Virus record (IMG/VR): IMGVR_UViG_3300049215_000771
Coordinates: 372,001-436,000 of that record
Direction: 5' to 3' (one strand)
Length of the DNA stretch: 64,000 nucleotides
Shown: positions 2,558-36,072 of the stretch, piece after piece
Layout: each line of letters opens with the position of its first letter
How positions within the stretch are numbered: the stretch's first letter is position 1
Position numbers and translations under genes: made by a program
The notes under the pieces: model-generated
What the model was told of the DNA's origin: nothing
What the model saw: only the letters and a program-made list of their open reading frames with translations
Database searches by the model: none

Positions 2558-3379
2558 CTAGTTTGGAAAAGGAGTGCCAGAAATCTTCAAGGTGAATGTG
2601 TCACCAGCTACCGGACCCATATTGGGCGGACAAACCCTTTGTATCCAAACCGGCACGATGTCTGTGCCTCGTATATCCCCAACGAGAAGCTGCGATGTGG
2701 GAGAAGGCGTATAAAACAAAATACCGTTCGGGGCTGTAGTTGTGGCATCGACAAGCGGGGCGATGCTGTTCAGTGGTGCCCCATCGAATATCTTCAGAAC
2801 GCTCACGCTACCAGGGGGCACACCAACCAGCGTACTATCGTCGATGACGGCCAGAACATCATGGAACCGATTCCCAGCATCTCCGATGAAGTTTACCTGG
2901 AATATAAAAGCACTGCCGTTGATGCCGCCAGTGACCGTGACATCAGTGAGATTCGTTAGCGCTGAGATAGCAGTTTGAAAATTCGCAGCCCACGCACTGA
3001 AAGAAGAAGCCCAATTCACCGTAAAATTCGTTCCTTCGTATTGAAGTGTCATCGAGCCGCCCGTGACATTTACGCCGTTGGCAACAGTGACTTGCTGGGT
3101 ATCATCTTGAAACTGAAACCCCAAAGCTACAGGAACACCGCCTGAACTTTCATCGTCGATATACACCGAGGCTCCGTACAAACTGTCAATGCTGTTGTCG
3201 TTCACAATGTACAAGCAATGGTAGTCCGTGTAGCCAGCCTGGGCCTGGGCTGTGGTAATATCAGGAAGCAACTGTCCAGTCAACGGCACGGCAGAAGGCT
3301 CCCCGCCCAGGGACTTCGTGGGATCGCTGTTGGAAGCACCACCAGAAAATAAGAAGGTAATGTCGGAAGGGCTTATCAT
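2558..3379 (-). CDS. putative virion structural protein (beta-rich)
   Basis: G/T/S/V/N-rich acidic protein, SGGASNSDPTKSLGG N-terminus; ATGA-coupled to a gene with a late promoter. Confidence 0.6.
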   Translation of the reverse strand: MISPSDITFLFSGGASNSDPTKSLGGEPSAVPLTGQLLPDITTAQAQAGYTDYHCLYIVNDNSIDSLYGASVYIDDESSGGVPVALGFQFQDDTQQVTVANGVNVTGGSMTLQYEGTNFTVNWASSFSAWAANFQTAISALTNLTDVTVTGGINGSAFIFQVNFIGDAGNRFHDVLAVIDDSTLVGVPPGSVSVLKIFDGAPLNSIAPLVDATTTAPNGILFYTPSPTSQLLVGDIRGTDIVPVWIQRVCPPNMGPVAGDTFTLKISGTPFPN

Positions 3380-3681
3380 TTTTGTCCTTCGGTCATGGTT
3401 TTAGCCAAAATGTAGCGGACATTTCGAGGGGTGTAGCCAGTGAATTCCGCAATTTCCTGGACGCCCCATCCTAAACTAGCGAGGTTGTGTACTTTCTGAT
3501 GATTTGCTTTAAGTCGATTTGGCGCAACATCATTGGCGTGAAGGATTCGGTAAATTTCAGCCTGCGACCGCTCGAAACAATGGGCAATTTCCGACACGGG
3601 CATCTTGGGATTTTCCAAGTACATCTGGATGATTTGCTCGTCGATACCGTTGGTCGTCAGGAATTCTCTAAAACCATACAT
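3376..3681 (-). CDS. double HTH DNA-binding protein with CTS-like N-terminus
   Basis: VSEIAHCFERSQAEIYRIL and VQEIAEFTGYTPRNVRYIL; starts MYGFREFL; ATAAATA 4 nt upstream of ATG. Confidence 0.8.
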   Translation of the reverse strand: MYGFREFLTTNGIDEQIIQMYLENPKMPVSEIAHCFERSQAEIYRILHANDVAPNRLKANHQKVHNLASLGWGVQEIAEFTGYTPRNVRYILAKTMTEGQK

Positions 3682-3820
3682 GCTGTATTTATCCAGGTTG
3701 ATATTGAAATCGAGGCATATAGGACTGATAATATCATCACCGGGACGTGAGCAAAGTATTTCTTGCGGTAATCGTAGGCAAAGGATTTCTCACGTCCCGG
3801 ATATTCTCAAGGAGCCTGTC

Positions 3821-4771
3821 ATGAACTTCACCTTCGGATCGGACCCTGAATTTGCACTGGCACAAAAAGGCCAGTTCAGGAGCGCCATCGGCGTTCTTCC
3901 CGAAAAGAAAAAAGCTATCAAACTTGGCGAAAGTAGTTTCTACTTCGACAACGTGCTGGCTGAAGTAGGTGTCCGCCCGACGAAGACTAAGCAGGAAGCC
4001 ACTTCTGCCATTCGTACTGCCTTGCAACACCTGCAAGAACTGGTTCGCCCGGCAAAAATCACGATTCGGGCCTCGATGAACTTCCCGGCTACAGAACTCA
4101 AGCATAAAAAAGCTATGGAGGCTGGCTGTGTTGCCGAATACTCGGCTTACACACTGCGCCGGATCGTTCCCCCGGTGGAATTCGTTGTCAAAGATGAAGA
4201 CACCGAGGAGATGTGTCACATCACGTCGTTCCGAACGGTAGGCGGACACATCCACCTGGGCGGGGAAGGAGTTCTCCAACATGGAATGCTTCAGCCCTAC
4301 ATCATCAAGATGATGGATTTGTTCATTGGCATCCCGGAGTTGTTCTTCAACAAGGACAAAACCGCACGAGATCGCCGCCAGGTATATGGCGTGGCCGGCT
4401 CGCACCGCAGACCGGATTACGGTATTGAATATCGCCCCCTGAGCAACTACTGGCTTTCTAGCCCTGTATATGTCGGCCTCGTATACGATCTTTGCGACTT
4501 CGTATTGAAGTTCGTCACCAAGAACGGCCATCTGAAATTCTGGCAGATCGACGAAGACTTGTTGGATGAGGATGATCCTTCAGTCGCTCATCGCTGCTAT
4601 GGCTACGATGTGAATGTGCTGCGCCAGGCCATCGACCAATACGACAAGAAACTCGCCAAACCTTTCTTGACACTGATCGCCAACGAACTGCCTGGCTCGT
4701 TGTATCAGGACATCGAGTCGGCGATTGATTACCAACCCCTTGAACTGAGCGAAGAATGGAGCATCAAATGA
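3821..4771 (+). CDS. phiEco32-like COOH-NH2 ligase type 2
   Basis: GSDPEF, DNVLAE, RTVGGHIHLG, RRQVYG, GIEYRPLSNYW motifs; GGAG RBS before ATG 3821. Confidence 0.85.
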   Translation: MNFTFGSDPEFALAQKGQFRSAIGVLPEKKKAIKLGESSFYFDNVLAEVGVRPTKTKQEATSAIRTALQHLQELVRPAKITIRASMNFPATELKHKKAMEAGCVAEYSAYTLRRIVPPVEFVVKDEDTEEMCHITSFRTVGGHIHLGGEGVLQHGMLQPYIIKMMDLFIGIPELFFNKDKTARDRRQVYGVAGSHRRPDYGIEYRPLSNYWLSSPVYVGLVYDLCDFVLKFVTKNGHLKFWQIDEDLLDEDDPSVAHRCYGYDVNVLRQAIDQYDKKLAKPFLTLIANELPGSLYQDIESAIDYQPLELSEEWSIK

Positions 4772-5394
4772 ACTTCTCGCATCAGTGGTATGTCCCCGAA
4801 GGTGATTGCGACGGCAGCGCCGTTGTTTTCTTGCCTGGTCGTGGGGCGTCCGCTCGCAGTCTGATGATGCAATATGAAGATTACCTTGATGACGAGGACC
4901 AGAAAATCCTCATCGCTATCGACCCGGAGAATGCCTCCTGGTATCCACCTCCCAACGGACCAAACGATCAAGACAGCGCCGTAACGGGGTGTGAGAAAAC
5001 TACAAAGGAATTGAACGCCTACATCGGCGAATTGCTGGCCAAACTTCACGTCCAGAAAGAAAATGTCGTGTTGGTTGGATTCTCGGCAGGCGGCGTCATG
5101 GCGATCCAGTTGGCCCTGCACGACAAATACGCAGGAGCCATCTGCCACAACGGATGCGTATTGGAACCTGGTATTCTCGACAAGAAGGTTCACAATCCGA
5201 CTATTTACCTATACCACGCCAGGGATGATGGTGTTTTCGGCTGGAAGGAGCGTTACCTTCCGACGAAGAAAGCCCTGATTGAGAAGGGCTATAACGTGGT
5301 GTGCAAGGAACACAACAAAGGCGGGCATCATATTCAGCACAGCGATATGCAGGATGCTCTCAAAGCGCTCGCCAAACTGCTGGAGAGGAAATGA
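4768..5394 (+). CDS. alpha/beta hydrolase (phospholipase/carboxylesterase family)
   Basis: LPGRG, nucleophile elbow GFSAGG, HARDD, GGHHI; ATGA overlap with upstream gene. Confidence 0.9.
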   Translation: MNFSHQWYVPEGDCDGSAVVFLPGRGASARSLMMQYEDYLDDEDQKILIAIDPENASWYPPPNGPNDQDSAVTGCEKTTKELNAYIGELLAKLHVQKENVVLVGFSAGGVMAIQLALHDKYAGAICHNGCVLEPGILDKKVHNPTIYLYHARDDGVFGWKERYLPTKKALIEKGYNVVCKEHNKGGHHIQHSDMQDALKALAKLLERK

Positions 5395-5762
5395 GAAAGT
5401 TTCTAATTGCTTTGCTGTTACTGGTTGGCGCAGGTGTGGCCCTGGCGGACGACACCTACCAATTGGTGTATGAAGGAACCTGGGTGACGACCAACCGTAA
5501 ATTGAACGGCACCATGACAGCTACCATCACGGAAGTAAGCGAAAACAAGTGGAAGGGTACTTTCGCCGGGGTGTGGGAAGGGCAGAAGTTCTCCTACAAC
5601 GTGGAGTTCAGCGGACCTCCCGATAACTTGACCGGCAAGGCTACCATCGACGGAGCAAGTTACCAGTGGACAGGCAAGATGTCACCAACTTCCCCTGGTA
5701 AGTTTGACGGTACGTTCGATGGCAGCCGCTACAAAGGCTACTTCAACTTGAAGCAAAAATAA
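5391..5762 (+). CDS. secreted beta-barrel-like hypothetical protein
   Basis: Signal peptide MRKFLIALLLLVGAGVALA; repeated GT(F/W)xG motifs; ATGA overlap. Confidence 0.8.
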   Translation: MRKFLIALLLLVGAGVALADDTYQLVYEGTWVTTNRKLNGTMTATITEVSENKWKGTFAGVWEGQKFSYNVEFSGPPDNLTGKATIDGASYQWTGKMSPTSPGKFDGTFDGSRYKGYFNLKQK

Positions 5763-6468
5763 CCACTTTGGGTTGTTCGAGTGTTTGCCGAATACGACGA
5801 CATGCTTCACGCACATCCATCTTCCGGCAACAATGGCACATCCACGGGAGATGGTGTTCGGCAAACGCTCGCACTTCCAACATCAAACGCTTCTTGTGGA
5901 TAACCTCCACTTTCCCGCAGCAACTACACGTCGTTTTCTTCAAGCCATGCGGCAGTGGCTTCGGTCCTCTCCTGAAAAAGTACCTGGGCCGCACTTCACG
6001 TCGGTTCTTGAAGTAAAAATCCCGAAGTTCCTGTGGCATATCTGGAATATCCAGCGATGTGCCACGAAGCCACAAATATCCAGTACCATCTTCGTGCGTG
6101 GATGGAGGAAGTACGGATTGGTGCAGTTGTCCACGAAACTCGATGTCCTGAAAACGGGTTGCGGTCAGGTGCGGGTCGGGATTGATGAATAGATGATGTA
6201 TCGAGCGAGAGCTACGGTACATGGGGTGTGGCAGGCCATCAATCATCCTAGTGAGAAGATCGTTGGCTTCAGGCGTGTCGCCCTCGACATCCACGATGTC
6301 GCCGAGCAGGATGCCAAGGTTGTAGTTGCCGGTTGCAATCATCTCCCGGCATTTTTCTTTGTTCCAGTTACGATTCCAGTTTTTGCCTACAGGAACTTTG
6401 GAGTTCTTGTACACCGGAATGATCTGCATACCCTTGAGGGTGTACAAATCGAAATACTTCAACAGCAT
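5743..6468 (-). CDS. bifunctional primase/polymerase (Prim-Pol) domain protein with C-terminal Zn finger
   Basis: IIPV..SKVP, NLGILLG, DVE, HHLF, VLPPSTH..G..Y.W; CSCC...CHCC tail. Confidence 0.8.
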   Translation of the reverse strand: MLLKYFDLYTLKGMQIIPVYKNSKVPVGKNWNRNWNKEKCREMIATGNYNLGILLGDIVDVEGDTPEANDLLTRMIDGLPHPMYRSSRSIHHLFINPDPHLTATRFQDIEFRGQLHQSVLPPSTHEDGTGYLWLRGTSLDIPDMPQELRDFYFKNRREVRPRYFFRRGPKPLPHGLKKTTCSCCGKVEVIHKKRLMLEVRAFAEHHLPWMCHCCRKMDVREACRRIRQTLEQPKVVIFASS

Positions 6469-6485
6469 GTCCGGCCCTGTGGGGG

Positions 6486-6647
6486 TTAGGAGGCATGAGA
6501 CGCCTCACGCAAATGGGCTTTGAAGGCTTCTCGAATGTCGTTTTGAGTGAGTTTTTCGACTGGTTTGTTGTGGCGGTGCGCCCACTCAATAATCTTTAAC
6601 AGCGCCCGCTCCCTTGTTTTGTCCAGCCAGTAGTTTCGCAGTTTCAT
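6486..6647 (-). CDS. small hypothetical protein (53 aa, below ORF-track cutoff)
   Basis: Translated by hand: MKLRNYWLDKTRERALLKIIEWAHRHNKPVEKLTQNDIREAFKAHLREASHAS; GAGG RBS. Confidence 0.6.
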   Translation of the reverse strand: MKLRNYWLDKTRERALLKIIEWAHRHNKPVEKLTQNDIREAFKAHLREASHAS

Positions 6648-6686
6648 GAGGTTCCCTCACTATAATGGAGCCAGGAGGAAAAAGCA

Positions 6687-7616: not shown

Positions 7617-7629
7617 AACCTGGCCTTTG
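7601..7629. terminator. bidirectional intrinsic terminator
   Basis: AAAGGCCAGGTT-TGA-AACCTGGCCTTT between convergent genes. Confidence 0.75.
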
Positions 7630-7633
7630 AAAG

Positions 7634-8431
7634 TTAGCGAATCTCACCGATTCGTCCCTGCGGAGCAAATCCCGGCTCGCCTGCCTGCGGCTCATCTCGA
7701 ACCGCCTGAGTCAAATTGTTCACATCAACTGGAGTGAACAATGCGTCCTCGTAGTAGCGGCTGAAGCCGTCGTCGTACTTGCGGGTTGTGTGCTGAGGAT
7801 CGAGCATGTTCTTAACACTCGCCATCCACTCAGCTTCGTCATCCAGGAAGGCTTCCTTCTTCATTTTCTTCTTGGAACCCTTCTTGCTCATCATCGGAAC
7901 TGGAGCCTTCTTGTCCATCGTGGCGTCCATTCCGCCCTCATCGTCACCCTCATCGCTGGTGCCGCCGTCGCCGTCACCGGAATCATCGTCGTCGTCATCA
8001 GAAGGCTCGCCTGCATCATCGTCGGCGTCGGACCACATTTTCTTCTTGGACTTCATCATCTTCTTCTTGGACTTCTTGGCGCACATGCGACCGCAGGCGT
8101 CTCCACCCATTTCATCGTCGCCCATGCCCATGTCATCGTCGCCCGCACCCATGTCATCACCGCCGCCCATATCGTCGCCGCCATCAACGTCTACGTCAAC
8201 GTCCGGGTGGTCCTTGGGTGCCTTGGCTTTAACGAGTTCGTCGCCGCCATCATCGTCACCACCGAACATCTTCTTCTTGGATTTCTTCATGGCCTTGGCT
8301 TTTTCTTCGTCGAGAGGAAGTCCAAATCCATTGGACGAAGTGATGCCAAGATTGGTTGGCTGGGCCAAACCGAGGGTGATGGGTCCGGCGAAGGACTCGT
8401 TCAACATTTTCCATTGCTTGTATGACAACAT
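7634..8431 (-). CDS. low-complexity acidic/basic-block protein, putative internal head protein
   Basis: MLSYKQWKMLNE N-terminus; KKSKKKM repeats alternating with D/G/M tracts; GGAG RBS; TATATA upstream. Confidence 0.8.
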   Translation of the reverse strand: MLSYKQWKMLNESFAGPITLGLAQPTNLGITSSNGFGLPLDEEKAKAMKKSKKKMFGGDDDGGDELVKAKAPKDHPDVDVDVDGGDDMGGGDDMGAGDDDMGMGDDEMGGDACGRMCAKKSKKKMMKSKKKMWSDADDDAGEPSDDDDDDSGDGDGGTSDEGDDEGGMDATMDKKAPVPMMSKKGSKKKMKKEAFLDDEAEWMASVKNMLDPQHTTRKYDDGFSRYYEDALFTPVDVNNLTQAVRDEPQAGEPGFAPQGRIGEIR

Positions 8432-8494
8432 GATTTTTCTCCAGCTTGTTACGGGTATATATTGCTGTCTATTAGCTTTCTCAACAGGTGCTTC

Positions 8495-17857: not shown

Positions 17858-19219
17858 ATGCCTGAGCAACTGATTCTTCGGCGGCGGTTGGGCAAGAAAA
17901 CTGGCGATGACAAGATCGAGGCGCAGGTTGATTACATCATCCGACGTGGGCTGCATGGCAGCCGAGGCAAGGGATGGGAAGTCAACAAGCGTCGTCACCC
18001 GCCCCGCAAAAACGGCGACTGGTGGGAGTTTCGCTACGACCTGTCGTTTGAAAAAACCGGGGGTCGTGGTCGTGGTACGGACACCGAATACCGGCAGTGG
18101 GAAGACATCAAGGCGATGATTATCCAGCAGGGTGCTGCCGCCAAATTCGGCGACTACCCCTGGGAAATCTTCAAGCCAACCGGAGAAGCCATCGGCACAA
18201 CTGCTGAAAACATTCGGGCGGCTCAACAAGAAGTCCGCACGAACAATGCCCTGGCGAACCTGGGTGGCGCTCCCCAACTGACGGCCCCGCCCCCGCCCGC
18301 TCCCGACAACGCCGTGACGCCCGACGCCAACGCCGAATCCATCGGTGACGTGGTGGGCGAGTTGAACAAGATCGTGACCAGCCTGGGTGGGGTCCGGGAA
18401 GTCCAGACGACCTTCAGCGTGGTCAAATCCTGGTCCGACCTTCAGATTCCCCCTGAACTGCTCGGTCGTGACAGTGACTTCCATCTGTCGCAACACCCGG
18501 CCTGGGCCGAGTTGTACGGCGTCGGGGCACAGATTCGTACTGTGCTTTCCAACATCAAGCGGGCGCACGACACGGATGGTCGCAGCCGCAACCACGGCGT
18601 CCTTTACGGACACGCCGGCTGTGGCAAGACAACCACCTTGCTGGCGCTGGAAGCAATGTTCGGACCTGGCTCCGTCCTTCGCCTGGATGCTACCAGCACC
18701 ACCAGGGCAGGCATCGAGAAGCTGTTCTTCTCCGATCTGCCCGTCATTCCGCCGCTGGTGTTCATGGAAGAAGCTGAGAAGGCAGACCCGGAAGCGTTGA
18801 AGGTTTGGCTGGGTGCCCTCGACGACCGTGGCGAGATTCGGAAGGTCAACTTCCGGGTCAACCAGCTTCGTGAAGTCAAGGTTCTGTTCATCTGCACTGT
18901 CAACAACAAGACGTTGTTCGACAAGATGATGGGTTCCGATGGCAGCGAGGCGGGCGCTCTGTCGAGCCGTTGTGTCAGCCAAATTTACTTCCCCCGGCCC
19001 AGCGACGTGGTTCTCCGTCAGATTCTTCTGAAGGAAGTCCACCGCAACGGCGGCGAGGAAGCCTGGATCAATCCGTGTATTCTCATGGCCCAGGAATTGG
19101 GCGTCACCGACCCTCGCATCGTCCGGTCGTACCTGGCAGGTGGTGAACGGCTGCTGGACGGCAGCTACCAGCGGGACTGGCAGGCCATCGCCGAGGCTGC
19201 CAAGACTTTCAGGAAGTAA
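17858..19219 (+). CDS. AAA+ ATPase with unknown N-terminal domain
   Basis: Walker A GHAGCGKTT, Walker B LVFMEE, ICTVN sensor 1, ALSSRC arginine finger. Confidence 0.88.
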   Translation: MPEQLILRRRLGKKTGDDKIEAQVDYIIRRGLHGSRGKGWEVNKRRHPPRKNGDWWEFRYDLSFEKTGGRGRGTDTEYRQWEDIKAMIIQQGAAAKFGDYPWEIFKPTGEAIGTTAENIRAAQQEVRTNNALANLGGAPQLTAPPPPAPDNAVTPDANAESIGDVVGELNKIVTSLGGVREVQTTFSVVKSWSDLQIPPELLGRDSDFHLSQHPAWAELYGVGAQIRTVLSNIKRAHDTDGRSRNHGVLYGHAGCGKTTTLLALEAMFGPGSVLRLDATSTTRAGIEKLFFSDLPVIPPLVFMEEAEKADPEALKVWLGALDDRGEIRKVNFRVNQLREVKVLFICTVNNKTLFDKMMGSDGSEAGALSSRCVSQIYFPRPSDVVLRQILLKEVHRNGGEEAWINPCILMAQELGVTDPRIVRSYLAGGERLLDGSYQRDWQAIAEAAKTFRK

Positions 19220-26954: not shown

Positions 26955-26990
26955 AAACGCTAAACGCCTGAGAAGTCTGTTGAAGGCTTC

Positions 26991-27248: not shown

Positions 27249-27427
27249 TTCAAGGACTCCAGCGCTAATCGTTGTTCTCCTTCGGTCTGATCTTCCTTTA
27301 CACTCATCGCAGCTACGATGCCAACGAGGGTGTTTTCAAGAAGAAGTTTTTTCTGTGGTTGTACACACCACTAGATGGACGTAATTTAACTGGAAAATGG
27401 TCGCTTCGCAAGCGGTAAAACGCAGTT

Positions 27428-28033
27428 TCATCCTTTTTTCTTGTTGTACAACCAGGAAGAAAACGACTCGGCCTTGACGCCGAAGTGTGCGGAAATGGCT
27501 TTCAGGTATGCGGGAATAGCCTCCTTCAACTTAGGATGGAGGCGGTAATCGTCAAGATCGTCGAATGGAATCCACTTGTAGTCACTGTGTTCGTCGCTCA
27601 GTTTGATCTTGAACTCCTTGGGGACCGCCATCAGAAAAACGTGGAAATGGTATGCCTTGTCCTTCATGTCAAAATGACCGAACTGCTTGGCATCAGGCAA
27701 CTTACCGATTTCCTCCCCTGTCTCTCGAATGGCGCAGTCCATCGGCGTTTCGCCGTCGTCTGCCCGTCCACCAGGGATGCACCACGTTTCTTTTTCGTCG
27801 CCTTTCTCTCGCTTGAGCAACAAGATGCTCTTCCCGTCCGTGTAAATGATGCCGGCTCCGAGCCGGCCCAGGTCGCCCTTGCCCTTGCCCTCAAAAAGAT
27901 CGGTGATCGTTGGGAAGACTTCTTCTCGTGTGATCCCCCATTCTGCGCATAGTGAACAAATGGCCCCCTGGCAGTGAATCCAGGAAGAAGAAACTGGCTT
28001 CCCGCAGTTGCAGCAGATGTTATAATCGGTCAT
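27428..28033 (-). CDS. Nudix hydrolase with N-terminal Zn finger
   Basis: Nudix box GGRADDGETPMDCAIRETGEEIG; LSDEHSDYKW; CCNC...CSLC. Confidence 0.92.
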   Translation of the reverse strand: MTDYNICCNCGKPVSSSWIHCQGAICSLCAEWGITREEVFPTITDLFEGKGKGDLGRLGAGIIYTDGKSILLLKREKGDEKETWCIPGGRADDGETPMDCAIRETGEEIGKLPDAKQFGHFDMKDKAYHFHVFLMAVPKEFKIKLSDEHSDYKWIPFDDLDDYRLHPKLKEAIPAYLKAISAHFGVKAESFSSWLYNKKKG

Positions 28034-28623
28034 GTTTTCGGGCCTCGCTTGAGCGGGACGGGTTTCAGCTTCTCCATGTGACGGTCAGGCTCGTTCCTGA
28101 CCGAGTGCATGAGGTTGTGCAGTTCCTTGGCGACATCAGCCGCCGAGTCCCCCGTGCATTTCCTGCTGTGCTGGAGGGAAGTGGTTTTTCGTTCACGGTT
28201 ATAGAAACCCTTGGATATTACGAAGCAGTTATGCTCGTGGTTCCAGGTGACGACGCCGCACCATTCGCCATCGTCCCAATTGCGGCTCGATACCATGAGC
28301 CGCAATGGTTTCTCCGTGAATACATGCTTGGTATGGAAACCGTGGTTCTTCAAGGCTGCCGATACATATCCGAGTGCGATCTTGGCGAACCCTTCTTGCG
28401 CTTCTGCCGCCGTGGTTCTGAAGTTGACCTCAATGGCGTATCGAGAAGTTTCCACAGCTTCGACGAGGTTTTCCTGACGATATTCGTATACAGTTTTCAT
28501 GTCACCACGCAGCGTTGCCTTGAAATACTCCAGGCATATGCGTGCGAATTCCTCTCGGCTGATCGTTTTGATGACAGCCGGATCGACAGTTAGTTCATCT
28601 TTCCAGTCTTGGAAACTCTTCAT
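28030..28623 (-). CDS. hypothetical protein with CTS-like N-terminus
   Basis: MKSFQDWKDE start with GGAGG RBS. Confidence 0.8.
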   Translation of the reverse strand: MKSFQDWKDELTVDPAVIKTISREEFARICLEYFKATLRGDMKTVYEYRQENLVEAVETSRYAIEVNFRTTAAEAQEGFAKIALGYVSAALKNHGFHTKHVFTEKPLRLMVSSRNWDDGEWCGVVTWNHEHNCFVISKGFYNRERKTTSLQHSRKCTGDSAADVAKELHNLMHSVRNEPDRHMEKLKPVPLKRGPKT

Positions 28624-28850
28624 CAATATCCTCCAGCCACTCTCGACGGCACGGCGAACAACTGATTCGTCTGCTGGGCCGGGACGGGGTAGCCCACGGT
28701 ATCCCTTGGCTTTTTCTTCTTGCATGGGCAGTCGGGCGGCAGTTGAACCTTTCTGTTCAACACTTCGTCATTCTCCAGCCATTGTCTGAAGGTTATCCCC
28801 AGGTCGGGCCGAGAACATCGCCGAATCTCGTTATCAGCCTTTCTTCCCAT
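28623..28850 (-). CDS. small protein with internal CTS-like motif; start uncertain
   Basis: ITFRQWLENDE; stop TGA overlaps the next ATG. Confidence 0.45.
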   Translation of the reverse strand: MGRKADNEIRRCSRPDLGITFRQWLENDEVLNRKVQLPPDCPCKKKKPRDTVGYPVPAQQTNQLFAVPSRVAGGY

Positions 28851-29668: not shown

Positions 29669-29690
29669 GAAGCTATATACCGATACAGAA

Positions 29691-32561
29691 ATGAAATCTC
29701 TAAAGGATAGACGAGGCATGTTGCAAGAGACTTCCGTGACATTCAGGGACTTTTTCCAAGACAAGTTCTTCCATGTAGACAGGAAGTACGTCGATATTAC
29801 TATGTCCAACGTCCTGGCTGAAATGGCCGTCCCCCTGGACATCCAGAAGCTCCCTATTAAGCCAGACAAAGATGACATTGCCTTCCTACAACAATTTCCT
29901 GCACAGTATTGGGCACAAGCACTCCATCAGCGTTACTATGACGACCTTCGCAATGCCCTGAAAGATCGGGAAGCCCGTCGTGCGCCGGTCGAGAAACGAT
30001 TGTACGGACTTCTCAAACGAGCCTTCTTCACCGGCAACTACGATAAACTCCGTGGTCAGGTATCTGAAGAAATGATGACTCGCCTTGCGAACGGCGACTT
30101 CAAGCACGTCGTTGGGGATGACGATCTCACCGAGAAAGCCGCTCGCAAGTGGGCCGAACTCGAAACTGAGAAGCATACGCCTCATGCCAACCCGCCAGAA
30201 ACAGAAGAAGGTCTGCCGCCTGGCTACAAGCGATACACCTTCAAGGTAAGTCGCAATGGCAACAAAACTGTATCGTTCGTCGCCAAACCAGAAATAAACA
30301 GATTGGTTCACAAACTGGAACGTACAAGGGGACATGAACATCACCCGGAATCCGGGTTGCCGCAACTTGGCATGACTCACGGACAGTACGGGTACGACTT
30401 GTACGGACTTCAGGATGGCGATGATGCGCATCCACACGTCACTCGTGGTATGCAGCTTCCTCCACGAGATGAAGTTGCCACCCGTATGAGCGACTACCTG
30501 AACCACAACGCCCACCAGATGTACGGCAAGATCAAGGCTGACGATCCAGATATTACCTGGAAGCCAGTCGGGTCTGGCCGCACTATGTACAAAGACAATT
30601 GGGCCTGGAAGAAAATATACAACAAGATATTTTCCGGTTGGAACTCTCGCCTGTCTTCCGCCGAGCCTGGCAGCCTCACGCTGCCCAATGGGGATCGTGT
30701 GCCGCCAGAAGGAGGTTTCAGGTCTGAAAATCAGCGACGTGCCACAGCCCACAGGTTGGCAATGGCTGATACCATCAAGATGGCAGAAGAAGGCAAACTC
30801 AAAGGTCCGCCGATCCCAGGGATCGCCCCGGAAGGTTTACCTGTGAAGGTAAAATCGGAAGGCGGCAAGAAGAAACTCGATGCCCCGCCGCTTTACCTGC
30901 CGCACAAGAAGATGCCGGTTCGTGTCAAGAATGGTAATGGACCGCCAACGGTAGAAATGCACGATGTACCACTGGTCAATCCGATGGAATATCTCCGTCA
31001 GTTGGGCAGCGAGCCGGAAGACTACGACAAGGAAACCGGCATGATGTTGGTTCCAAATGACCAGCTTCGTGGACACAACCAAGACTACGTTCACGTTCCT
31101 CACAACGAGTTCAAGAAAGCCAAAGGCTACCTTGCTGGGGGCGCTCTGCATGTTACTCACAACTCAGCCGGTCGTATGCACCTTGATCCCTCCGATCCTG
31201 AATACCAGGAACGGAAGGAACACATTGAAAGCGAGATGCAGCAAACAGGGCTGAACGCCAAGAATGAGCCAGCACAAAATGGTGAGGGCGAATACTTCTA
31301 CGACATCGTGAAGGGCATCTGGAACTGTATTCGTAGTGCCTGCGGTGGTATGACGAATCACGAAGTCGAGATCATGAAGCAAAACGTACACGATCTTCAC
31401 CAGATGGTGTATCAGCGCATGATGATGAATCTTCGTGATGAACGCCTTGACACACCGAAAGGTCGGAGGGCTTTCGCTCGTAACGTCGCTTCTAGCTGGG
31501 CACAACAAGATTTGGGTGCGGGTGGTGGAACTCGTAGGCTTCGTCGTTTGAGCCAAGATGCTCGCAGTGCCAGTATGGACGCAACAACTCAGGGTGAAAG
31601 CGGCGACAGCCTCAGCTTGCGTGACTCCATTCAACAAAGGATGAGAGACAAAGATTCCGGCGAGGCCAAGATTGGTCAGGGTGAGAAGATTCGTCCTGGG
31701 GCTGGGCAGCACGCCTTCCCGTACAACATCGACAACTTGAGAACCACGATTGCCGAAATGGAGCGTGAAGCCCAAGAAGTTGACCAGGCTCGTGACCAAG
31801 CTATTCAGATGAGCAAGTCGCAGATTAGCGACGAGATTGCCGACCTGATCGGCGATGCTATTGCTGACAAGGCTGCGTTGACCATCAAGTTGGAGTATTT
31901 GCTCACTCAGTTGTACCTGCACGCTGGTTCGCCGGCCAACGAAGCCGAGTTTCAGGCCAAGGCCAAAGTCGAACAATACTCCCAAGGCAAAACGGCCAAG
32001 AAAATGATCGCCGCTTTCAAAGGCGATGCAGATATTCGGCAGATGTTGGCAGCCCCGGAAGGCCAACAGGGACCAGGCCAGCAGATGAGTCTGGCGCAAA
32101 AAGATGCTGTAGAAAGACTTGATGGAATCCTGAAGCAACTTCCACCAAACAAGCTGAAGGAGCCAGCCACGCAGCAAATGATCGACAACTACATTTCTGA
32201 GCAACCGCCAGAAGTGCAGGCTGTATTGAAGCCAATGGCAGATAAAGCGTTTGGCAGGGCTGCACCTGCGCAACCCGCTGCACAACCACAAGCGAAAAAA
32301 ACTCAACCTTCAGCCGGTGGCCCGCAGGACGAAGCAAACGCTATGATTCGTTCGCAGAATTGGCTCGGACTAGCCAACAACGCTTATTTCCTACACGTTG
32401 CCAACAAAGTACAGCTTCAGGCTATCATTGGCAAGTTGGAAGCAGCGATGCAGTCCTTGCAGGGCTTTGACCGTGACAACCACGAGTTTGCTGTTGCCCA
32501 TTTGAGAACATTGCTCAGGCAACGGCAGGCTCCAAAAACAGGATTGGACAAGATACAATGA
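29691..32561 (+). CDS. large putative virion-internal protein
   Basis: About 956 aa; CTATATA upstream; TFRDFF CTS-like motif; Q/A/P-rich C-terminus; internal sigma-like segment. Confidence 0.8.
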   Translation: MKSLKDRRGMLQETSVTFRDFFQDKFFHVDRKYVDITMSNVLAEMAVPLDIQKLPIKPDKDDIAFLQQFPAQYWAQALHQRYYDDLRNALKDREARRAPVEKRLYGLLKRAFFTGNYDKLRGQVSEEMMTRLANGDFKHVVGDDDLTEKAARKWAELETEKHTPHANPPETEEGLPPGYKRYTFKVSRNGNKTVSFVAKPEINRLVHKLERTRGHEHHPESGLPQLGMTHGQYGYDLYGLQDGDDAHPHVTRGMQLPPRDEVATRMSDYLNHNAHQMYGKIKADDPDITWKPVGSGRTMYKDNWAWKKIYNKIFSGWNSRLSSAEPGSLTLPNGDRVPPEGGFRSENQRRATAHRLAMADTIKMAEEGKLKGPPIPGIAPEGLPVKVKSEGGKKKLDAPPLYLPHKKMPVRVKNGNGPPTVEMHDVPLVNPMEYLRQLGSEPEDYDKETGMMLVPNDQLRGHNQDYVHVPHNEFKKAKGYLAGGALHVTHNSAGRMHLDPSDPEYQERKEHIESEMQQTGLNAKNEPAQNGEGEYFYDIVKGIWNCIRSACGGMTNHEVEIMKQNVHDLHQMVYQRMMMNLRDERLDTPKGRRAFARNVASSWAQQDLGAGGGTRRLRRLSQDARSASMDATTQGESGDSLSLRDSIQQRMRDKDSGEAKIGQGEKIRPGAGQHAFPYNIDNLRTTIAEMEREAQEVDQARDQAIQMSKSQISDEIADLIGDAIADKAALTIKLEYLLTQLYLHAGSPANEAEFQAKAKVEQYSQGKTAKKMIAAFKGDADIRQMLAAPEGQQGPGQQMSLAQKDAVERLDGILKQLPPNKLKEPATQQMIDNYISEQPPEVQAVLKPMADKAFGRAAPAQPAAQPQAKKTQPSAGGPQDEANAMIRSQNWLGLANNAYFLHVANKVQLQAIIGKLEAAMQSLQGFDRDNHEFAVAHLRTLLRQRQAPKTGLDKIQ

Positions 32562-32776
32562 TAAGCTACAAGGAATGGCGTAGGTTGAGAGAAATGGCTG
32601 GCACTGGAGCTATATGGCCGGGCGGCAAAGAAAAAGGCCAAGTTCCCGCCGCTGCGCCAACCAAGAAAAATCCACTGCCCGCCAACAAACGAGACTACAA
32701 CTGGTGGGGTGCCCCTGAAACGGCGGGCATGACTCAGGGCCAAGCTAAAGCCGAAATGGAGAAAGATACGAAATGA
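32558..32776 (+). CDS. small CTS-bearing protein
   Basis: MISYKEWRRLRE start; ATGA coupling. Confidence 0.8.
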   Translation: MISYKEWRRLREMAGTGAIWPGGKEKGQVPAAAPTKKNPLPANKRDYNWWGAPETAGMTQGQAKAEMEKDTK

Positions 32777-33033
32777 ATTGGCTGACAATGTTGGCGAATC
32801 CCAAAGGATTTGCCATCCGAAAGATGATGTTCGAGTTTTTGAAGGAAAGATATGGGCGAAATGACCAGATCGTTGAACGCCTGTCGGCTTCTTTGACAAC
32901 TGAAGGAGACGTGCAGGCGTTCATTAAACTGATGATTGATGTCTACGAGAAAGGCTACATGCAGGCGGTCGATGACCATAAAGAACAATTAGCCAAGATC
33001 GGATTGAAAGTCAGTGTCAAACCACCGAGCTAA
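32773..33033 (+). CDS. hypothetical protein
   Basis: ATGA coupling. Confidence 0.75.
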   Translation: MNWLTMLANPKGFAIRKMMFEFLKERYGRNDQIVERLSASLTTEGDVQAFIKLMIDVYEKGYMQAVDDHKEQLAKIGLKVSVKPPS

Positions 33034-33698
33034 TCGACGTTATCAAACGCAGGTGTGAAATCGGATGGATAGCCGGCCATCAACCAGCCACCATTTTTTT
33101 CTTCAAGTTCTTGAACCCTCCACCACCTTTGAGCGTCCATCACGCCATCTCTTCTCTTTTTGGGATAAACCACAGAACCTTTCGTCACCAATGCCACGTT
33201 TGTCCACAGAACGATGCGCATATCTTCTTCTTCGAGAATGACACCCTCGAATGAAAATGGTTTGCCATACTGAATTGTTTGATATTTCTCGCCGTACATA
33301 CCATCACGGCGGTCACGCATGGTTGCTGGCAAACAATACATGAAAGTTTTGTTTCTGTCGGGGACGGAAGATTTTTTCCGAGGTTGTTCTGGTTCGGGAA
33401 CGAACTTAACGGGTTCTTCTTTGACTTCGGGGAGTGGCTGTGAGGGTTTTTCCTCAATGGGAGCGGGTCGTTGTTCGGTTACAACGATGTCTGGTTTGGT
33501 TTCAGCCAACGCCTGGGCGAAATCATCCCGAAGGTTGAAATCGCTCTCCATAGTGTTGATTTCTCGATCATCGAGAGCAGTTTCGGGCTGAAACTTCATA
33601 TTGTGAACCTGGAAATCTTGCCAGGTTTCCTGACCCTTCATCATTGGATTGGGGCCACGCAATTTGTACAGTGTGCCGTCACGATTCTTCAGTGCCAT
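33030..33698 (-). CDS. late hypothetical protein, N-terminus similar to the gp14-like protein
   Basis: MALKNRDGTLYKLRG vs MTILNPDGTPYKLTG (35042); TATATA-GAGT-ATG. Confidence 0.75.
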   Translation of the reverse strand: MALKNRDGTLYKLRGPNPMMKGQETWQDFQVHNMKFQPETALDDREINTMESDFNLRDDFAQALAETKPDIVVTEQRPAPIEEKPSQPLPEVKEEPVKFVPEPEQPRKKSSVPDRNKTFMYCLPATMRDRRDGMYGEKYQTIQYGKPFSFEGVILEEEDMRIVLWTNVALVTKGSVVYPKKRRDGVMDAQRWWRVQELEEKNGGWLMAGYPSDFTPAFDNVD

Positions 33699-33727
33699 AC
33701 TCTATATACGTTGAGAGGAGATAACCT

Positions 33728-34162
33728 ATGTCAATAGTAGTGCCAAATACAGCCGAATGTCTCATGTTGCAGTACATCACCAACATGATCGGCCAGGACG
33801 GTGGATCAGCACCATCTGGCGGGCAGCGGTGTCTCCGCTTGTTCACGAACAACATAACTCCAGGCGATACAACCGCCATCAATGACTTAACTGAAGCTAC
33901 TACTCCAACAGGTTATCAGCCGATCACTTTGGCTGGCGCTAGTTGGACGACAGTTATCACAAACGGCTCAGGACTTGCTGTTTACAGTCAACAAATCTTC
34001 ACATTCACAACGGGCGTGACTCTCTACGGTTATTATGTAACCACGATTGGCGTATCGCCACAACTATTGTGGGTGGAAGTATTCACCAACACTCCTTGGA
34101 CCTTACCAGATGGTGGAGGTCAGGTAGGTGTAACCCCACAGTTCGCAATGAACAACCCTTGA
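33728..34162 (+). CDS. putative virion structural protein
   Basis: T/G-rich; LRLFTNNITP, GYQPITL, YGYYV; GAGGAG RBS. Confidence 0.7.
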   Translation: MSIVVPNTAECLMLQYITNMIGQDGGSAPSGGQRCLRLFTNNITPGDTTAINDLTEATTPTGYQPITLAGASWTTVITNGSGLAVYSQQIFTFTTGVTLYGYYVTTIGVSPQLLWVEVFTNTPWTLPDGGGQVGVTPQFAMNNP

Positions 34163-34180
34163 TACCAGAAATCACACTTC

Positions 34181-34211
34181 AACCCGTCCTCATTTTGAGG
34201 ACGGGTTTTTT
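34181..34211 (+). terminator. intrinsic terminator
   Basis: AACCCGTCCTCA-TTT-TGAGGACGGGTT followed by a T-run. Confidence 0.8.
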
Positions 34212-34235
34212 GTTGCCGAACTCCTAAATACCCCC

Positions 34236-35045
34236 ATGATGGACACAACATTCAGACTTTGGCTAATCGACGAGGACTGGCGATCTCTGCTTGGCGCTAT
34301 CCTCCTGGAAACCGACGCCTTCGATGCGGCGATGGTTTCTTTCAATGCGCAGTTCGCACAAGCATTCGGTGGCATCCGTAAGAATTGGTTCGGCATTCTC
34401 ATTAGTCAGGCACAGCGCTACGCCCAAGGTCAGGACATCTTGACGGTCGCCAGCGATGCTGCCCAAGAAATGTTGCAACTACTACAAACCAAACCAGCCG
34501 GCGACCAGTTCGTTCAGGGTGTAGAACATATCCTCGCCATACCGGACGAAACACAGAAAGCAGAAGAACTAACAAACTTCTTCGCCACAGCAGGTCGATT
34601 GCGTGTCCGTCGTCATGCAGGCCAGTTCCATCGGCGACGGGATCAAATGACGACACACTTCAGCGCTATTGACGGAGGTTCGGCGAGCGGCGGTTCTGCT
34701 GTAAACAATGTCCGAGATAGAAGTTCTCCGACTGACTCCGAAGACCGCATGGAGTCTTTGCGTCGTGGCATCATGATGGAACTAGAGAAGATGAAACAAA
34801 GCGCTAACGATAAGCGCACCAAGGAGCGTTTCGAGTTGGCGAAACGGGTCGCCGAGAAGCGAATGGAGAACCCGCCTGAGTTTCCTGGCCTGGACGAACT
34901 GGAAGGAATGTTCCCGGAAGTGGGCAGAACGAAGTTGTTTCAGATTTTGCAAGACATTCAGGCTGCGGCCACGGCTGCGGCGTCGAAGATCGGCATTGAC
35001 ACTGCTAGTATTCAGGATGCAAAAAGGGCCAGGAAACACGGATGA
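34236..35045 (+). CDS. CTS-bearing protein with ECF-sigma-like features
   Basis: MMDTTFRLWLIDE; ASDAAQEML; C-terminal HTH-like GLDELEGMFPEVGRTKLFQILQDI; CTAAATA 5 nt upstream. Confidence 0.6.
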   Translation: MMDTTFRLWLIDEDWRSLLGAILLETDAFDAAMVSFNAQFAQAFGGIRKNWFGILISQAQRYAQGQDILTVASDAAQEMLQLLQTKPAGDQFVQGVEHILAIPDETQKAEELTNFFATAGRLRVRRHAGQFHRRRDQMTTHFSAIDGGSASGGSAVNNVRDRSSPTDSEDRMESLRRGIMMELEKMKQSANDKRTKERFELAKRVAEKRMENPPEFPGLDELEGMFPEVGRTKLFQILQDIQAAATAAASKIGIDTASIQDAKRARKHG

Positions 35046-35584
35046 CGATATTGAACCCGGATGGGACTCCTTACAAGCTGACGGGAAGCATCGAACAGTT
35101 TGATCCAAATGATCCAGAACATGAGTTATTCAACTTGTGGGATCAGGAGGCTATCAGACAGGGTGGATCGCCCATTCTCTACTACGAGGTAATCATCTCG
35201 CCGCAAGATGTTGATCCACAATACCTGGAAGCTAGAAACAAGAGATTCAGCCAATTCCCGGTGTCGTTGTATTGCAGCTACGATCCGAAGAACGCCCAAA
35301 ACTTGGTAAATGCCTTCGGCATCGACGCTCCTGATGAATTGGAGATTGAATTCAACTACAGGGACGTGTTGCAGAAGGTAGGGCACCCACCCAAAATTGG
35401 GTCGAGGTTATACACTCCTCACCTGCGGGAAAATTGGGTAATCATTCAAAGGAACCTTGGTGAGTTCAAGATGTGGGGTGCGTTGCGTTTGACAATCATC
35501 GCACAAAGGTTCCAGGAATCTACAACTACCGGCGAAGGAAAAGTTACACAAAAAAATCCAACGCCCAAGTACAAGATCATCTAA
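35042..35584 (+). CDS. gp14: neck/head-closure protein, T4 gp14-like
   Basis: QEAIRQGG..I.YY, FGIDAPDEL, PKIGSRLY; position near gp13/gp15. Confidence 0.7.
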   Translation: MTILNPDGTPYKLTGSIEQFDPNDPEHELFNLWDQEAIRQGGSPILYYEVIISPQDVDPQYLEARNKRFSQFPVSLYCSYDPKNAQNLVNAFGIDAPDELEIEFNYRDVLQKVGHPPKIGSRLYTPHLRENWVIIQRNLGEFKMWGALRLTIIAQRFQESTTTGEGKVTQKNPTPKYKII

Positions 35585-35592
35585 GGAGCATC

Positions 35593-36072
35593 ATGAAGTC
35601 ATTCTACAAGTTCTATCAGCAAGTTCTCAAAGAAGCAGCCGCTCCTGTTGGGCAGAATTCAGGTCAGCCACAGGCGGCAGGTGGAGCGCCAGGTGGCGCT
35701 GCCCCACCAGCACCAGGAACAGCAGCCCCTCCTGGCCAACCGCCAGCGCCTCCAGGACAAGGGGCACCAGGTCAGCCAGGTCAGCCAGGTCAACAAGGTC
35801 AGCAAGGTGGAGGCGGACAAGGTGTAGCCCCACCAGTACCGCCTCCTGATCCGGCAGTACAACAAATTCAACAATTACTCAATCCGCTGGCGGCGCAACT
35901 TCAGGGACACATTGAGAAGATTCAAGACCCGAAGGTGAAGGAAGCCCTGAAAAGTGTGTTGGGTCAAGGAGGCAATAACCAACAGCATCAGGCTGCTGGA
36001 AATGCACAACCGAAACCGCAACCTGTCCAACCTCCAGCACAGGCAGGCGCAGCAAAACAGCCCGGTCAATAG
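35593..36072 (+). CDS. CTS-bearing Q/P/G/A low-complexity protein
   Basis: MKSFYKFYQQVLKE then PGQ repeats; AAGGAG RBS. Confidence 0.8.
   Translation: MKSFYKFYQQVLKEAAAPVGQNSGQPQAAGGAPGGAAPPAPGTAAPPGQPPAPPGQGAPGQPGQPGQQGQQGGGGQGVAPPVPPPDPAVQQIQQLLNPLAAQLQGHIEKIQDPKVKEALKSVLGQGGNNQQHQAAGNAQPKPQPVQPPAQAGAAKQPGQ

What the first reader, a model, noticed from the sequence alone, without database searches (positions are those of the whole stretch)
3376..36072. About ten unrelated proteins share a T4-like capsid-targeting N-terminus
Seen: MYGFREFL (3681-), MLSYKQWKMLNE (8431-), MKTFLNWAGE (14410+), MKSFIQW (14641+), MKSFQDWKDE (28623-), ITFRQWLENDE (~28799-), TFRDFF (29691+), MISYKEWRRLRE (32558+), TTFRLWLIDE (34236+) and MKSFYKFYQQVLKE (35593+). 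Several follow a late promoter. Known: T4 internal proteins use MKTYQEFIAE-type signals cleaved after Glu by gp21. Inference: a large cargo set is packaged in the head and injected, including an HTH protein and sigma-like proteins.
Basis: partly seen in the sequence, partly recalled or inferred. Interest (0 to 1): 0.7.

Follow-up and report, generated by a model that had tools for sequence, protein, structure and literature searches.

The report
T4-type capsid-targeting tags on many megaphage proteins
A 0.53-Mb T4-like phage from a moss metagenome puts a short N-terminal tag, of the kind phage T4 uses to load proteins into its head, on about 35 unrelated proteins, some from counter-defence enzyme families, so it probably injects a large pre-made protein toolkit together with its DNA.

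Summary
The window lies in a 532,729-bp T4-like phage record with a gp21-type prohead protease and a gp23 capsid protein. The pattern M-x-[ST]-[FY]-x-x-[WF] occurs at 16 start-like ATGs against 2.6 expected. Outside the window, which is an independent test, it is 10 against 1.8. A profile of these N-termini finds about 35 genes, roughly 5% of the genome.

A Glu follows at positions 9-15 in 18 of 18 strict members, and a T4-like [LIVM]-x-E in 13 of 18. The bodies are unrelated. Run on phage T4, the same profile ranks IPIII, IPII and IPI among the top four of 1,560 ORFs. In an Acb1-like enzyme family the tag is a modular prefix, present in about a third of homologs.

Tagged proteins include Acb1-like, SAM-lyase-like (DUF3293), NUDIX and C39-peptidase domains. 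A related 595-kb phage shows the same pattern.

Packaging, cleavage and injection are inferred, not shown. The upstream TAnATA element looks like a promoter, but it is not shown to be late.

The parts
3376..3681 (-). 101-aa protein, N-terminus MYGFREFL...IDE. Probable tag member with a weak HTH.
   Evidence: Translation. HTH_23/HTH_24 hits at E 1e-4, below cut-off. PHROG HTH hits. ATAAATAC lies 4 nt before the ATG.
3685..3692 (-). ATAAATAC promoter-like element 4 nt upstream of ATG 3681.
   Evidence: Genome-wide peak of TAnATA at 4-5 nt before ATG.
7634..8431 (-). 265-aa acidic low-complexity protein with tag MLSYKQWKMLNE|S.
   Evidence: No Pfam or PHROG family. Ortholog-like MISYKQWKILSE in LR756511. 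ATATATAC at 8455-8462.
14410..14637 (+). 75-aa protein with tag MKTFLNWAGE|N. First of a tandem paralog pair.
   Evidence: CTATATAC at 14382-14389 plus an SD. RNA contigs 14454-14886 in 4 metatranscriptomes while the flanks are near 0.
14641..14943 (+). 100-aa paralog with tag MKSFIQWAWMNKKE|L.
28030..28623 (-). 197-aa protein with tag MKSFQDWKDE|L. Member of a large conserved family of unknown fold.
   Evidence: 903 homologs. In 77 homologs of the same length, F4 is present in 64/77, W7 in 76/77 and E/D10 in 57/77. AF2 model has helix 4-11 followed by a loop. No fold match.
28623..28850 (-). 75-aa ORF with ITFRQWLENDE at residues 19-29. Doubtful member because the motif is not N-terminal.
29691..32561 (+). 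About 956-aa protein starting MKSLKDRRGMLQETSVTFRDFF. Doubtful member.
   Evidence: CTATATAC at 29673-29680. No family.
32558..32776 (+). 72-aa basic Gly/Pro/Ala-rich protein with tag MISYKEWRRLRE|M.
   Evidence: RNA contig 32623-32784.
34236..35045 (+). 269-aa protein with tag MMDTTFRLWLIDE|D. Weak sigma-70-like structural lead.
   Evidence: CTAAATAC at 34224-34231, 5 nt before the ATG.
35593..36072 (+). 159-aa Pro/Gly/Gln-rich protein with tag MKSFYKFYQQVLKE|A.
   Evidence: AAGGAG SD 5 nt upstream.
33702..33709 (+). CTATATAC element upstream of the untagged ORF 33728-34162. RNA contigs of three runs begin at 33726-33730.

Best explanation
The shared N-terminus is the counterpart, in this megaphage clade, of the phage T4 capsid targeting sequence (CTS).

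Proposed mechanism:
- A 10-20-residue amphipathic helix carries aromatic residues three apart. In the canonical register these are F/Y at position 4 and W/F at position 7.
- The helix docks the newly made protein onto the scaffolding core of the prohead.
- A Glu-terminated site follows, mostly [LIVM]-x-E at positions 9-15. The gp21-type prohead protease cuts there and releases the mature protein inside the head.
- In many members a Pro/Gly/Ala/Gln-rich linker follows the cut site.
- The freed proteins leave with the DNA at infection.

About 35 genes (roughly 5% of the genome) carry the tag, 8-10 of them in this window. Their bodies are unrelated. They include an Acb1-like 2H phosphoesterase, DUF3293/SAM-lyase-like proteins, a NUDIX hydrolase, a C39-like cysteine peptidase, small basic low-complexity proteins, a weak-HTH protein and a possible sigma-like protein.

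Shown: the motif, its enrichment, its modularity, its match to the T4 determinants, the presence of the protease, conservation across the clade, and RNA-library coverage consistent with transcription for one pair.

Inferred: docking to the core, cleavage, residence in the virion, and ejection.
For: 1. The genome is T4-like. Peptidase_S77 scores 99.6 bits and Gp23 scores E 1e-86. Portal, sheath and TerL homologs are present. The order portal, 649-aa protein, gp21, an acidic helical 299-aa protein, gp23 follows T4.
2. Enrichment at gene starts: 16 observed against 2.6 expected genome-wide, and 10 against 1.8 outside the window. By profile, 22 of 1,239 near-start ATGs score 10 bits or more, against 1 of 2,423 internal ATGs.
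3. Features not used to define the motif: Glu at positions 9-15 in 18/18 members against 39% of other genes (p 7e-8); [LIVM]xE in 13/18 against 13% (p 4e-8); P/G/A/Q content of residues 16-60 is 42% against 24% (p 3e-6).
4. Positive control: the profile built from this phage ranks T4 gp61.1, IPIII, IPII and IPI as the top 4 of 1,560 T4 ORFs. The T4 tags were read from AF158101.
5. T4 genetics place targeting at residues 4 and 7 and processing at residues 8 and 10, with L/I-X-E cleavage (PMC9026906). In 77 orthologs of the 197-aa protein, F4 (64/77), W7 (76/77) and E/D10 (57/77) are conserved while positions 3, 5 and 9 vary.
6. Modularity. Known domains start after the tag: NUDIX at residue 14, DUF3293 at 21, C39 at 27. 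Of 102 Acb1-like homologs, 53 start directly at the domain; 47 have a 9-30-aa extension, and 35 of those match the aromatic-x-x-aromatic pattern (about 32 on inspection).
7. Selection is at the amino-acid level: six codons in three codon families encode position 3.
8. The bodies are unrelated.
9. Clade-wide occurrence: 24 regex hits, about 19 of them motif-like, in 1 Mb around the MCP genes of 80 relatives, including orthologs that keep the tag. About 20 tags were found in 200 kb of LR756511 at 43% GC.
10. gp21 itself starts MNKEELQLLIE, against T4 MNEPQLLIE. gp23 has several LxE sites ahead of the region that aligns with mature T4 gp23.
11. The tandem tagged genes 14410 and 14641 form a sharp RNA-contig peak in 4 metatranscriptomes.
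Against: - There is no virion proteome and no N-terminal sequence, so packaging, cleavage and ejection are untested.
- Five of the 18 strict members lack a hydrophobic residue at P3 of the Glu. The 197-aa family has R/K at position 8, where T4 has I/L.
- No homolog of T4 gp22 is detectable by sequence. The scaffold is assigned only by position and composition.
- A three-chain prediction of gp21, the gp22 candidate and a tag peptide gave no answer.
- Several members start at ATGs without an SD, and one source gene call omits the tag (P0002). Those starts rest on homolog conservation and on the promoter geometry.
- The upstream TAnATA element also precedes replication and recombination genes. 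Co-expression with head assembly is therefore not established.
Confidence: 0.7

Rival explanations
1. The N-terminal helix is a shared docking peptide for some other common partner, such as host RNA polymerase, a chaperone, a membrane or a phage compartment. The proteins would act in the cytoplasm of the producing cell and would not be packaged.
For: There is no direct virion evidence. Enzymes such as NUDIX, Acb1-like and SAM-lyase-like proteins are cytoplasmic, unpackaged proteins in the phages I know of (own knowledge, not tested). The TAnATA element is shared with gp41-like and gp46-like genes. The complex prediction was uninformative.
Against: The profile specifically recovers the three experimentally proven T4 CTS proteins. 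The conserved positions are those that T4 genetics tie to capsid targeting. A following Glu site and linker are expected for a cleaved propeptide, not for a permanent docking helix. A gp21-type protease is present.
Confidence: 0.15
2. The similarity is a by-product of translation initiation on leaderless or short-leader mRNAs, or of general N-terminal codon preferences. It would not be a peptide signal.
For: In 20 of 35 tagged genes TAnATA lies 4-9 nt before the ATG, which would give essentially leaderless mRNAs. Lys at position 2 is enriched genome-wide.
Against: Position 3 uses ACN, TCN and AGY codons, and position 4 uses TTC, TTT and TAC, so the conservation is in amino acids and not bases. 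Tagged genes with classical SD leaders (8431-, 14410+, 28623-, 35593+) carry the same motif. More than half of the leaderless-type genes have no tag (26 of 46). T4 IP genes carry the motif behind ordinary SDs.
Confidence: 0.05
3. The tags mark a recombination cassette: a shared 5' gene end that lets accessory genes be swapped between phages. In this reading they have little function of their own.
For: Tagged genes are concentrated in a variable region, with 14 of about 37 lying in genome 352-408 kb. In T4-even phages the IP loci are hypervariable behind a conserved CTS (PMC3012670).
Against: The tags differ at the DNA level and are too short and too diverged for homologous recombination. Orthologs keep the aromatic and Glu positions while the rest drifts. 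This reading is compatible with, and secondary to, a targeting function.
Confidence: 0.1

Closest known systems
Phage T4 capsid targeting sequence of internal proteins IPI, IPII and IPIII (MKTYQEFIAE / MKTFKEF...), removed by the gp21 prohead protease
   Same: N-terminal position, a length of 10-20 aa, aromatic residues at positions 4 and 7, a following Glu (L/I-x-E), unrelated mature bodies, and a gp21-type protease in the genome. The profile built here recognises the T4 tags.
   Different: - About 35 tagged genes, against 3-4 in T4.
- The tag is fused to recognisable enzyme domains: Acb1-like, DUF3293/SAM-lyase-like, NUDIX and C39.
- Trp is preferred at position 7.
- The Glu is often at position 12-14 and is followed by a Pro/Gly/Ala-rich linker.
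- Many of the genes sit 4-5 nt behind a TAnATA element with no SD.
- Nothing has been verified experimentally.
T4 Alt and the prohead core proteins gp67 and gp68 (other gp21 substrates)
   Same: They are packaged through the scaffolding core and cleaved after Glu (PMC5694885; PMC9026906). Alt shows that an enzyme can be delivered this way.
   Different: Their N-termini (MELITELFDE, MEGLIE, MLLIPE) do not carry the aromatic 4/7 pattern seen here.
Ejection proteins of giant phages phiKZ, 201phi2-1 and SPN3US
   Same: Large sets of head-internal proteins are processed after Glu by a gp21-related protease and enter the host (PMC5694885; PMC9026906).
   Different: Those propeptides are mostly longer than 100 residues, the cleavage motif is S/A-x-E, and there is no shared short tag. 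The capsid lineage is different, and those cases have proteomic proof.
Phage P1 Dar system (DarA, Hdf and others), anti-restriction proteins packaged in the head
   Same: The concept of counter-defence proteins pre-loaded in the capsid and injected (PMC12810830 and PMC9024508, listed; not read in detail).
   Different: P1 is not known to use a T4-type tag (own knowledge, not tested here), and its capsid and protease lineage are unrelated.

Membership tests
T4-type capsid targeting sequence (CTS) / internal-protein system | A short (10-20 aa) propeptide at the extreme N-terminus with the targeting determinants at residues 4 and 7 (aromatic in T4) | tested here: met
   Regex and profile hits lie at gene starts. 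F4 is present in 64/77 and W7 in 76/77 orthologs. T4 determinants are given in PMC9026906.
T4-type capsid targeting sequence (CTS) / internal-protein system | Sequence kinship with the proven T4 tags | tested here: met
   The profile built from this phage ranks IPIII, IPII and IPI 2nd to 4th of 1,560 T4 ORFs, with gp61.1 first.
T4-type capsid targeting sequence (CTS) / internal-protein system | A processing site ending in Glu, L/I-x-E, just after the targeting residues | tested here: inconclusive
   Glu at positions 9-15 in 18/18 members and [LIVM]xE in 13/18, against 13% of other genes. Five members and the 197-aa family (R/K at position 8) lack the hydrophobic P3 residue. Cleavage itself was not observed.
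T4-type capsid targeting sequence (CTS) / internal-protein system | A gp21-type (Peptidase_S77) prohead protease encoded by the same phage | tested here: met
   Genome 337220-337906, 99.6 bits against a cut-off of 27; 35% identity to T4 gp21; a shared QLLIE N-terminus.
T4-type capsid targeting sequence (CTS) / internal-protein system | A gp22-type scaffolding core to which the tag binds | tested here: inconclusive
   There is no sequence match to T4 gp22 and no Pfam or PHROG family. A 299-aa acidic protein with 18 [LIVM]xE sites sits between gp21 and gp23 as in T4. The complex prediction gave no answer.
T4-type capsid targeting sequence (CTS) / internal-protein system | The same tag on otherwise unrelated mature proteins (a modular signal) | tested here: met
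   All-vs-all BLASTP found only one related pair. Domains start after the tag. Tagged and untagged forms occur within one enzyme family.
T4-type capsid targeting sequence (CTS) / internal-protein system | Proteins physically present in the head, trimmed, and ejected into the host | not testable with these tools
   The phage is uncultured and from a moss metagenome. No proteome is available.
T4-family late promoter (TATAAATA at -13..-6; Aeh1 variant CTAAATA from -12) | A consensus element at the right distance from the transcript start, found in front of late (virion) genes only | tested here: inconclusive
   - (C/G)TAnATA is 7-10 times enriched upstream of genes, with a peak 4-5 nt before the ATG.
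- It precedes 26 of 35 tagged genes, against 62 of 706 others.
- RNA contig boundaries lie 8 nt after CATATAC (12807) and 17-21 nt after CTATATAC (33726-33730).
- The T4 geometry comes from PMC1524935.
- The element is also found before gp41-like, gp46-like and dTMP-kinase-like genes.
- No gp55 homolog was found with the T4 protein as query.

The most novel reading that the evidence does not exclude
Megaphages of this T4-like clade use one short tag to pre-load their very large heads with dozens of different proteins. The load would include ready-made counter-defence enzymes: an Acb1-like cyclic-nucleotide phosphodiesterase, SAM-lyase-like proteins, a NUDIX hydrolase and a C39 protease. It may also include a sigma-like factor. 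Host immune signalling, restriction and transcription would then be attacked at the moment of DNA entry, before any phage gene is expressed. The tag would also be a portable address label, which explains why it appears and disappears within enzyme families.
Probability: 0.4. Interest if true: 0.8.

Novelty: new variant of a known kind. Interest (0 to 1): 0.66.

Why it matters
The T4 CTS is a textbook device, but it is known from only a handful of small internal proteins. Here the same device appears to address about 5% of the genes of a half-megabase phage, and it recurs across a widespread environmental clade: 353 related capsid loci in IMG/VR and a 595-kb GenBank genome.

If the tagged proteins are packaged, three things follow.
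- It would explain part of what huge phages do with their extra genes and their extra head volume.
- It would add delivery with the DNA as a route for anti-CBASS and anti-restriction enzyme families that I know only as enzymes expressed after infection (own knowledge, not tested here).
- It would give a simple sequence rule for predicting virion cargo in uncultured T4-like phages.

There is also an annotation point. Many tagged genes sit directly behind a TAnATA element with no ribosome-binding site, and at least one public gene call starts downstream of the tag.

Tried and rejected
- My own ZOOPS-EM motif search on crude gene calls did find SF.E.L-type motifs with a higher likelihood than shuffled or internal controls, but the result was diffuse.
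- Exact-residue triplet enrichment on the same crude calls was not significant after Bonferroni correction, because my caller mis-placed many of the relevant starts. I replaced both approaches with start-independent tests.
- Single-sequence searches with T4 gp55 and gp22 in the genome found nothing.
- Most tagged proteins have no Pfam or PHROG family.
- The AF2 model of the 197-aa protein (pLDDT 79) matched no known fold in PDB or BFVD.
- The complex prediction of gp21, the gp22 candidate and a 30-aa tag gave 'no answer'. It is not evidence either way.
- A megablast of the 947-aa gene against GenBank phages found nothing.
- A look-up for the 673-kb source contig returned only a 149-kb contig.
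- I rejected the idea that the motif is a nucleotide-level signal.
- I rejected the idea that TAnATA is a strictly late promoter.

Full report
**What the window is.** The window is bases 372,001-436,000 of a 532,729-bp IMG/VR virus record with 52.7% GC. The DNA occurs in moss metagenomes and in metatranscriptomes that appear to come from the same kind of samples. The genome is T4-like:
- a Peptidase_S77 (gp21) prohead protease at genome 337,220-337,906 (99.6 bits);
- a gp23 major capsid protein at 338,843-340,279 (E 1e-86, 28% identical to T4 gp23);
- a T4-type portal that carries an intein;
- homologs of the sheath, large terminase, gp25, gp41, gp46 and gp47.

The head genes run portal, a 649-aa protein, gp21, a 299-aa acidic protein, gp23. 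The nearest GenBank record is the 595-kb uncultured phage LR756511, with 81.5% capsid identity. IMG/VR holds 353 loci whose capsid genes relate to this one; the 80 kept are 83-96% identical.

**Checking the observation.**
- Seven are clean N-terminal matches: 8431-, 14410+, 14641+, 28623-, 32558+, 34236+ and 35593+.
- 3681- is a probable member.
- ~28799- is doubtful. Its motif lies at residues 19-29 of a 75-aa ORF that has its own ATG and a strong SD.
- 29691+ is doubtful. Its motif lies at residues 17-22.

The bodies of the proteins are unrelated, apart from the tandem pair 14410/14641.

The strict pattern M-x-[ST]-[FY]-x-x-[WF] was tested on every ATG of the genome in six frames.
- 23 hits were seen against 11.2 expected.
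- 16 of them lie at start-like ATGs, where 2.6 are expected.

A profile built from 18 such N-termini then finds further members whose Met sits one to eight residues further upstream, or one residue closer to the motif (MNFRQFLEHE). Examples are MKRVTFKEWLEKRE, MTSSFREWLEATE and MNFRQFLEHE. This gives about 35 genes. At 10 bits or more the profile hits 22 of 1,239 near-start ATGs and 1 of 2,423 ATGs inside genes. The conserved Ser/Thr is written with ACN, TCN and AGY codons, so selection acts on the peptide and not on the DNA.

**What else the tagged N-termini share.** These features were not used to define the motif.
- All 18 strict members have a Glu at positions 9-15, against 39% of other genes.
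- 13 of 18 have [LIVM]-x-E there, against 13% of other genes.
- Residues 16-60 are rich in Pro, Gly, Ala and Gln (42% against 24%).

The common architecture is therefore helix, Glu site, flexible linker, body. An AlphaFold model of the 197-aa protein at 28030-28623 shows a helix at residues 4-11 followed by a loop.

**Comparison with T4.**
- Read from the T4 record, IPII and IPIII begin MKTYQEFIAE and IPI begins MKTFKEF.
- The review PMC9026906 reports that the first ten residues of IPIII suffice for packaging. It places targeting mainly at residues 4 and 7 and processing at residues 8 and 10, and it gives L/I-X-E as the gp21 cleavage site.
- In 77 orthologs of the 197-aa protein, the conserved N-terminal positions are F4 (64/77), W7 (76/77) and E/D10 (57/77). 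Positions 3, 5 and 9 drift.
- As a positive control I ran the profile built from this phage on all 1,560 ATG ORFs of T4. The top four are gp61.1 (MKTFKEFIKE), IPIII, IPII and IPI.
- The protease here begins MNKEELQLLIE and T4 gp21 begins MNEPQLLIE.
- gp23 here has four LxE sites ahead of the part that aligns with mature T4 gp23.

**Modularity.** Where a known domain is present, it starts after the tag.
- NUDIX starts at residue 14.
- DUF3293/S-AdoMet-lyase-like starts at residue 21.
- Peptidase_C39 starts at residue 27.
- The Acb1/2H-phosphoesterase match covers residues 63-152, which corresponds to profile position 33.

The Acb1-like family provides a natural experiment. Of 102 homologs, 53 begin within 8 residues of the conserved YDYSS anchor and cannot hold a tag. 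Another 47 have a 9-30-residue extension. Of these, 35 match the aromatic-x-x-aromatic pattern and about 32 are convincing on inspection (MSFKQFLANE, MKTTTFRQFLAE, MKTWNQFLIEKE and similar). Orthologs of small head-module proteins in relatives also keep the tag while the remainder diverges.

**Replication.** Four 50-kb samples of LR756511 (42-46% GC) contain about 20 such N-termini.

**Upstream DNA.**
- (C/G)TAnATA is strongly enriched in front of genes.
- Its end lies most often 4-5 nt before the ATG (24 genes).
- It precedes 26 of 35 tagged genes against 62 of 706 others (odds ratio 30).
- 20 of 35 tagged genes have it 4-9 nt before the ATG.
- The same arrangement recurs in LR756511.

The element resembles T4-family late promoters: TATAAATA at -13 to -6 in T4, and CTAAATA from -12 in Aeh1 (PMC1524935). 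With that geometry transcription would start on or next to the A of the ATG, giving leaderless mRNAs.

RNA contigs from four metatranscriptomes give limited support.
- Contig ends lie at 12807 in two runs, 8 nt after a CATATAC.
- Contigs begin at 33726-33730 in three runs, 17-21 nt after a CTATATAC.
- The tagged pair 14410/14641 forms a sharp peak while neighbouring DNA is uncovered. That argues for RNA and against carried-over DNA.

The element cannot be called late. It also sits directly before the gp41-like helicase, gp46/SbcC-like and dTMP-kinase-like genes. As TATATAC it lies 38-75 nt upstream of the terminase, the sheath and the head operon. No gp55 homolog was found with the T4 protein as query.

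**Interpretation.** The most economical reading is that these are T4-type capsid targeting sequences. The helix binds the prohead core, the gp21-type protease removes it after the Glu, and the mature protein stays in the head and leaves with the DNA. I give this 0.7.

The steps shown are the signal, its statistics, its modularity, its match to the T4 determinants, the presence of the protease, and conservation in the clade. Docking, cleavage, residence in virions and ejection are inferred. The scaffold is identified only by position and composition. A structure prediction of protease, scaffold candidate and tag gave no answer.

The rival readings fit the data less well. They are a docking helix for another partner, a side effect of leaderless translation, and a recombination cassette.

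**What is new.** The CTS principle is known, and the review already suggests that it lets T4-like phages load varied proteins. Three things are new here.
- The scale: about 35 genes against 3-4 in T4.
- The fusion of the tag to enzyme families known from counter-defence or nucleotide metabolism.
- The coupling to an SD-less promoter-like element.

In the paper that describes the huge-phage clades, the words 'injected' and 'packaged' do not occur and 'capsid' appears only in phylogeny and gene-list contexts. My literature searches found no report of CTS tags in such phages. I file the finding as a new variant of a known kind.

Noticed in passing
Genome 58147-58311, 351363-351485, 453534-453695, 475584-475757 (-), 517823-517981, 518357-518440, 524427-524744. 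All lie outside the window.: At least seven short ORF pieces match different parts of the gp23 capsid protein at 36-78% identity. Together they cover most of its length and are scattered over the genome. Whether they are debris of a second capsid gene, leftovers of homing-endonuclease events, or functional fragments is unknown.
   Followed up: partly
window:45466-45633 (-) and genome 27573-27878 (+): There are two portal-like fragments. One is a 71-aa stretch 41% identical to portal residues 515-585. The other is a 101-aa ORF whose start MASWTDFFKLW mimics the portal N-terminus MPIWSDFFKLF.
   Followed up: no
Genome 330903-333470 (outside the window): The T4-type portal gene is interrupted by an intein: an Intein_splicing domain plus HTH at residues 157-335, with Portal_T4 at residues 366-724.
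   Followed up: no
Genome 238229-238600 (-): A second, diverged prohead-protease paralog is present, 39% identical to gp21 over 124 aa. It recalls the protease paralog reported for SPN3US-like giant phages (PMC5694885).
   Followed up: no
Genome-wide, for example window 3685-3692 (-) and 34224-34231 (+): The end of TAnATA lies 4-5 nt before the ATG of 24 genes, with no Shine-Dalgarno sequence. With T4 late-promoter geometry the mRNAs would be leaderless. The same arrangement is seen in LR756511.
   Followed up: partly
window:12482-12775 (-) and window:33728-34162 (+): Two small untagged ORFs (97 and 144 aa) give the highest RNA-contig depth of the two 6-kb stretches examined, in all four metatranscriptomes. 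Their function is unknown.
   Followed up: no
Whole record: Two of the genome's own proteins are recorded on a contig of 673,178 bp, while the IMG/VR record is 532,729 bp and is classed as 'provirus'. The phage contig may have been trimmed and the true genome may be larger. A look-up did not retrieve that contig.
   Followed up: partly
Phage T4 record AF158101: gene 61.1 (18966-19130, -) and gene 57B (73952-74410, -): The T4 hypothetical protein gp61.1 (54 aa) begins MKTFKEFIKE and is the best T4 match to the tag profile. T4 Acb1 (gp57B), encoded next to ipI, begins MMEFKDF, with Phe at positions 4 and 7. Whether either protein is packaged was not looked up.
   Followed up: no
Genome 315000-315569 (-): The public gene call for the Acb1-like protein (157 aa, P0002) starts 32 residues downstream of the tagged start, which its closest homologs conserve. 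Automatic annotation may cut off tags on genes without an SD.
   Followed up: partly
window:37519-39879 (+): The 786-aa protein just downstream of the finding is the T4 gp18 tail-sheath homolog (30% identity over 290 aa), with a TATATAG about 75 nt upstream.
   Followed up: no
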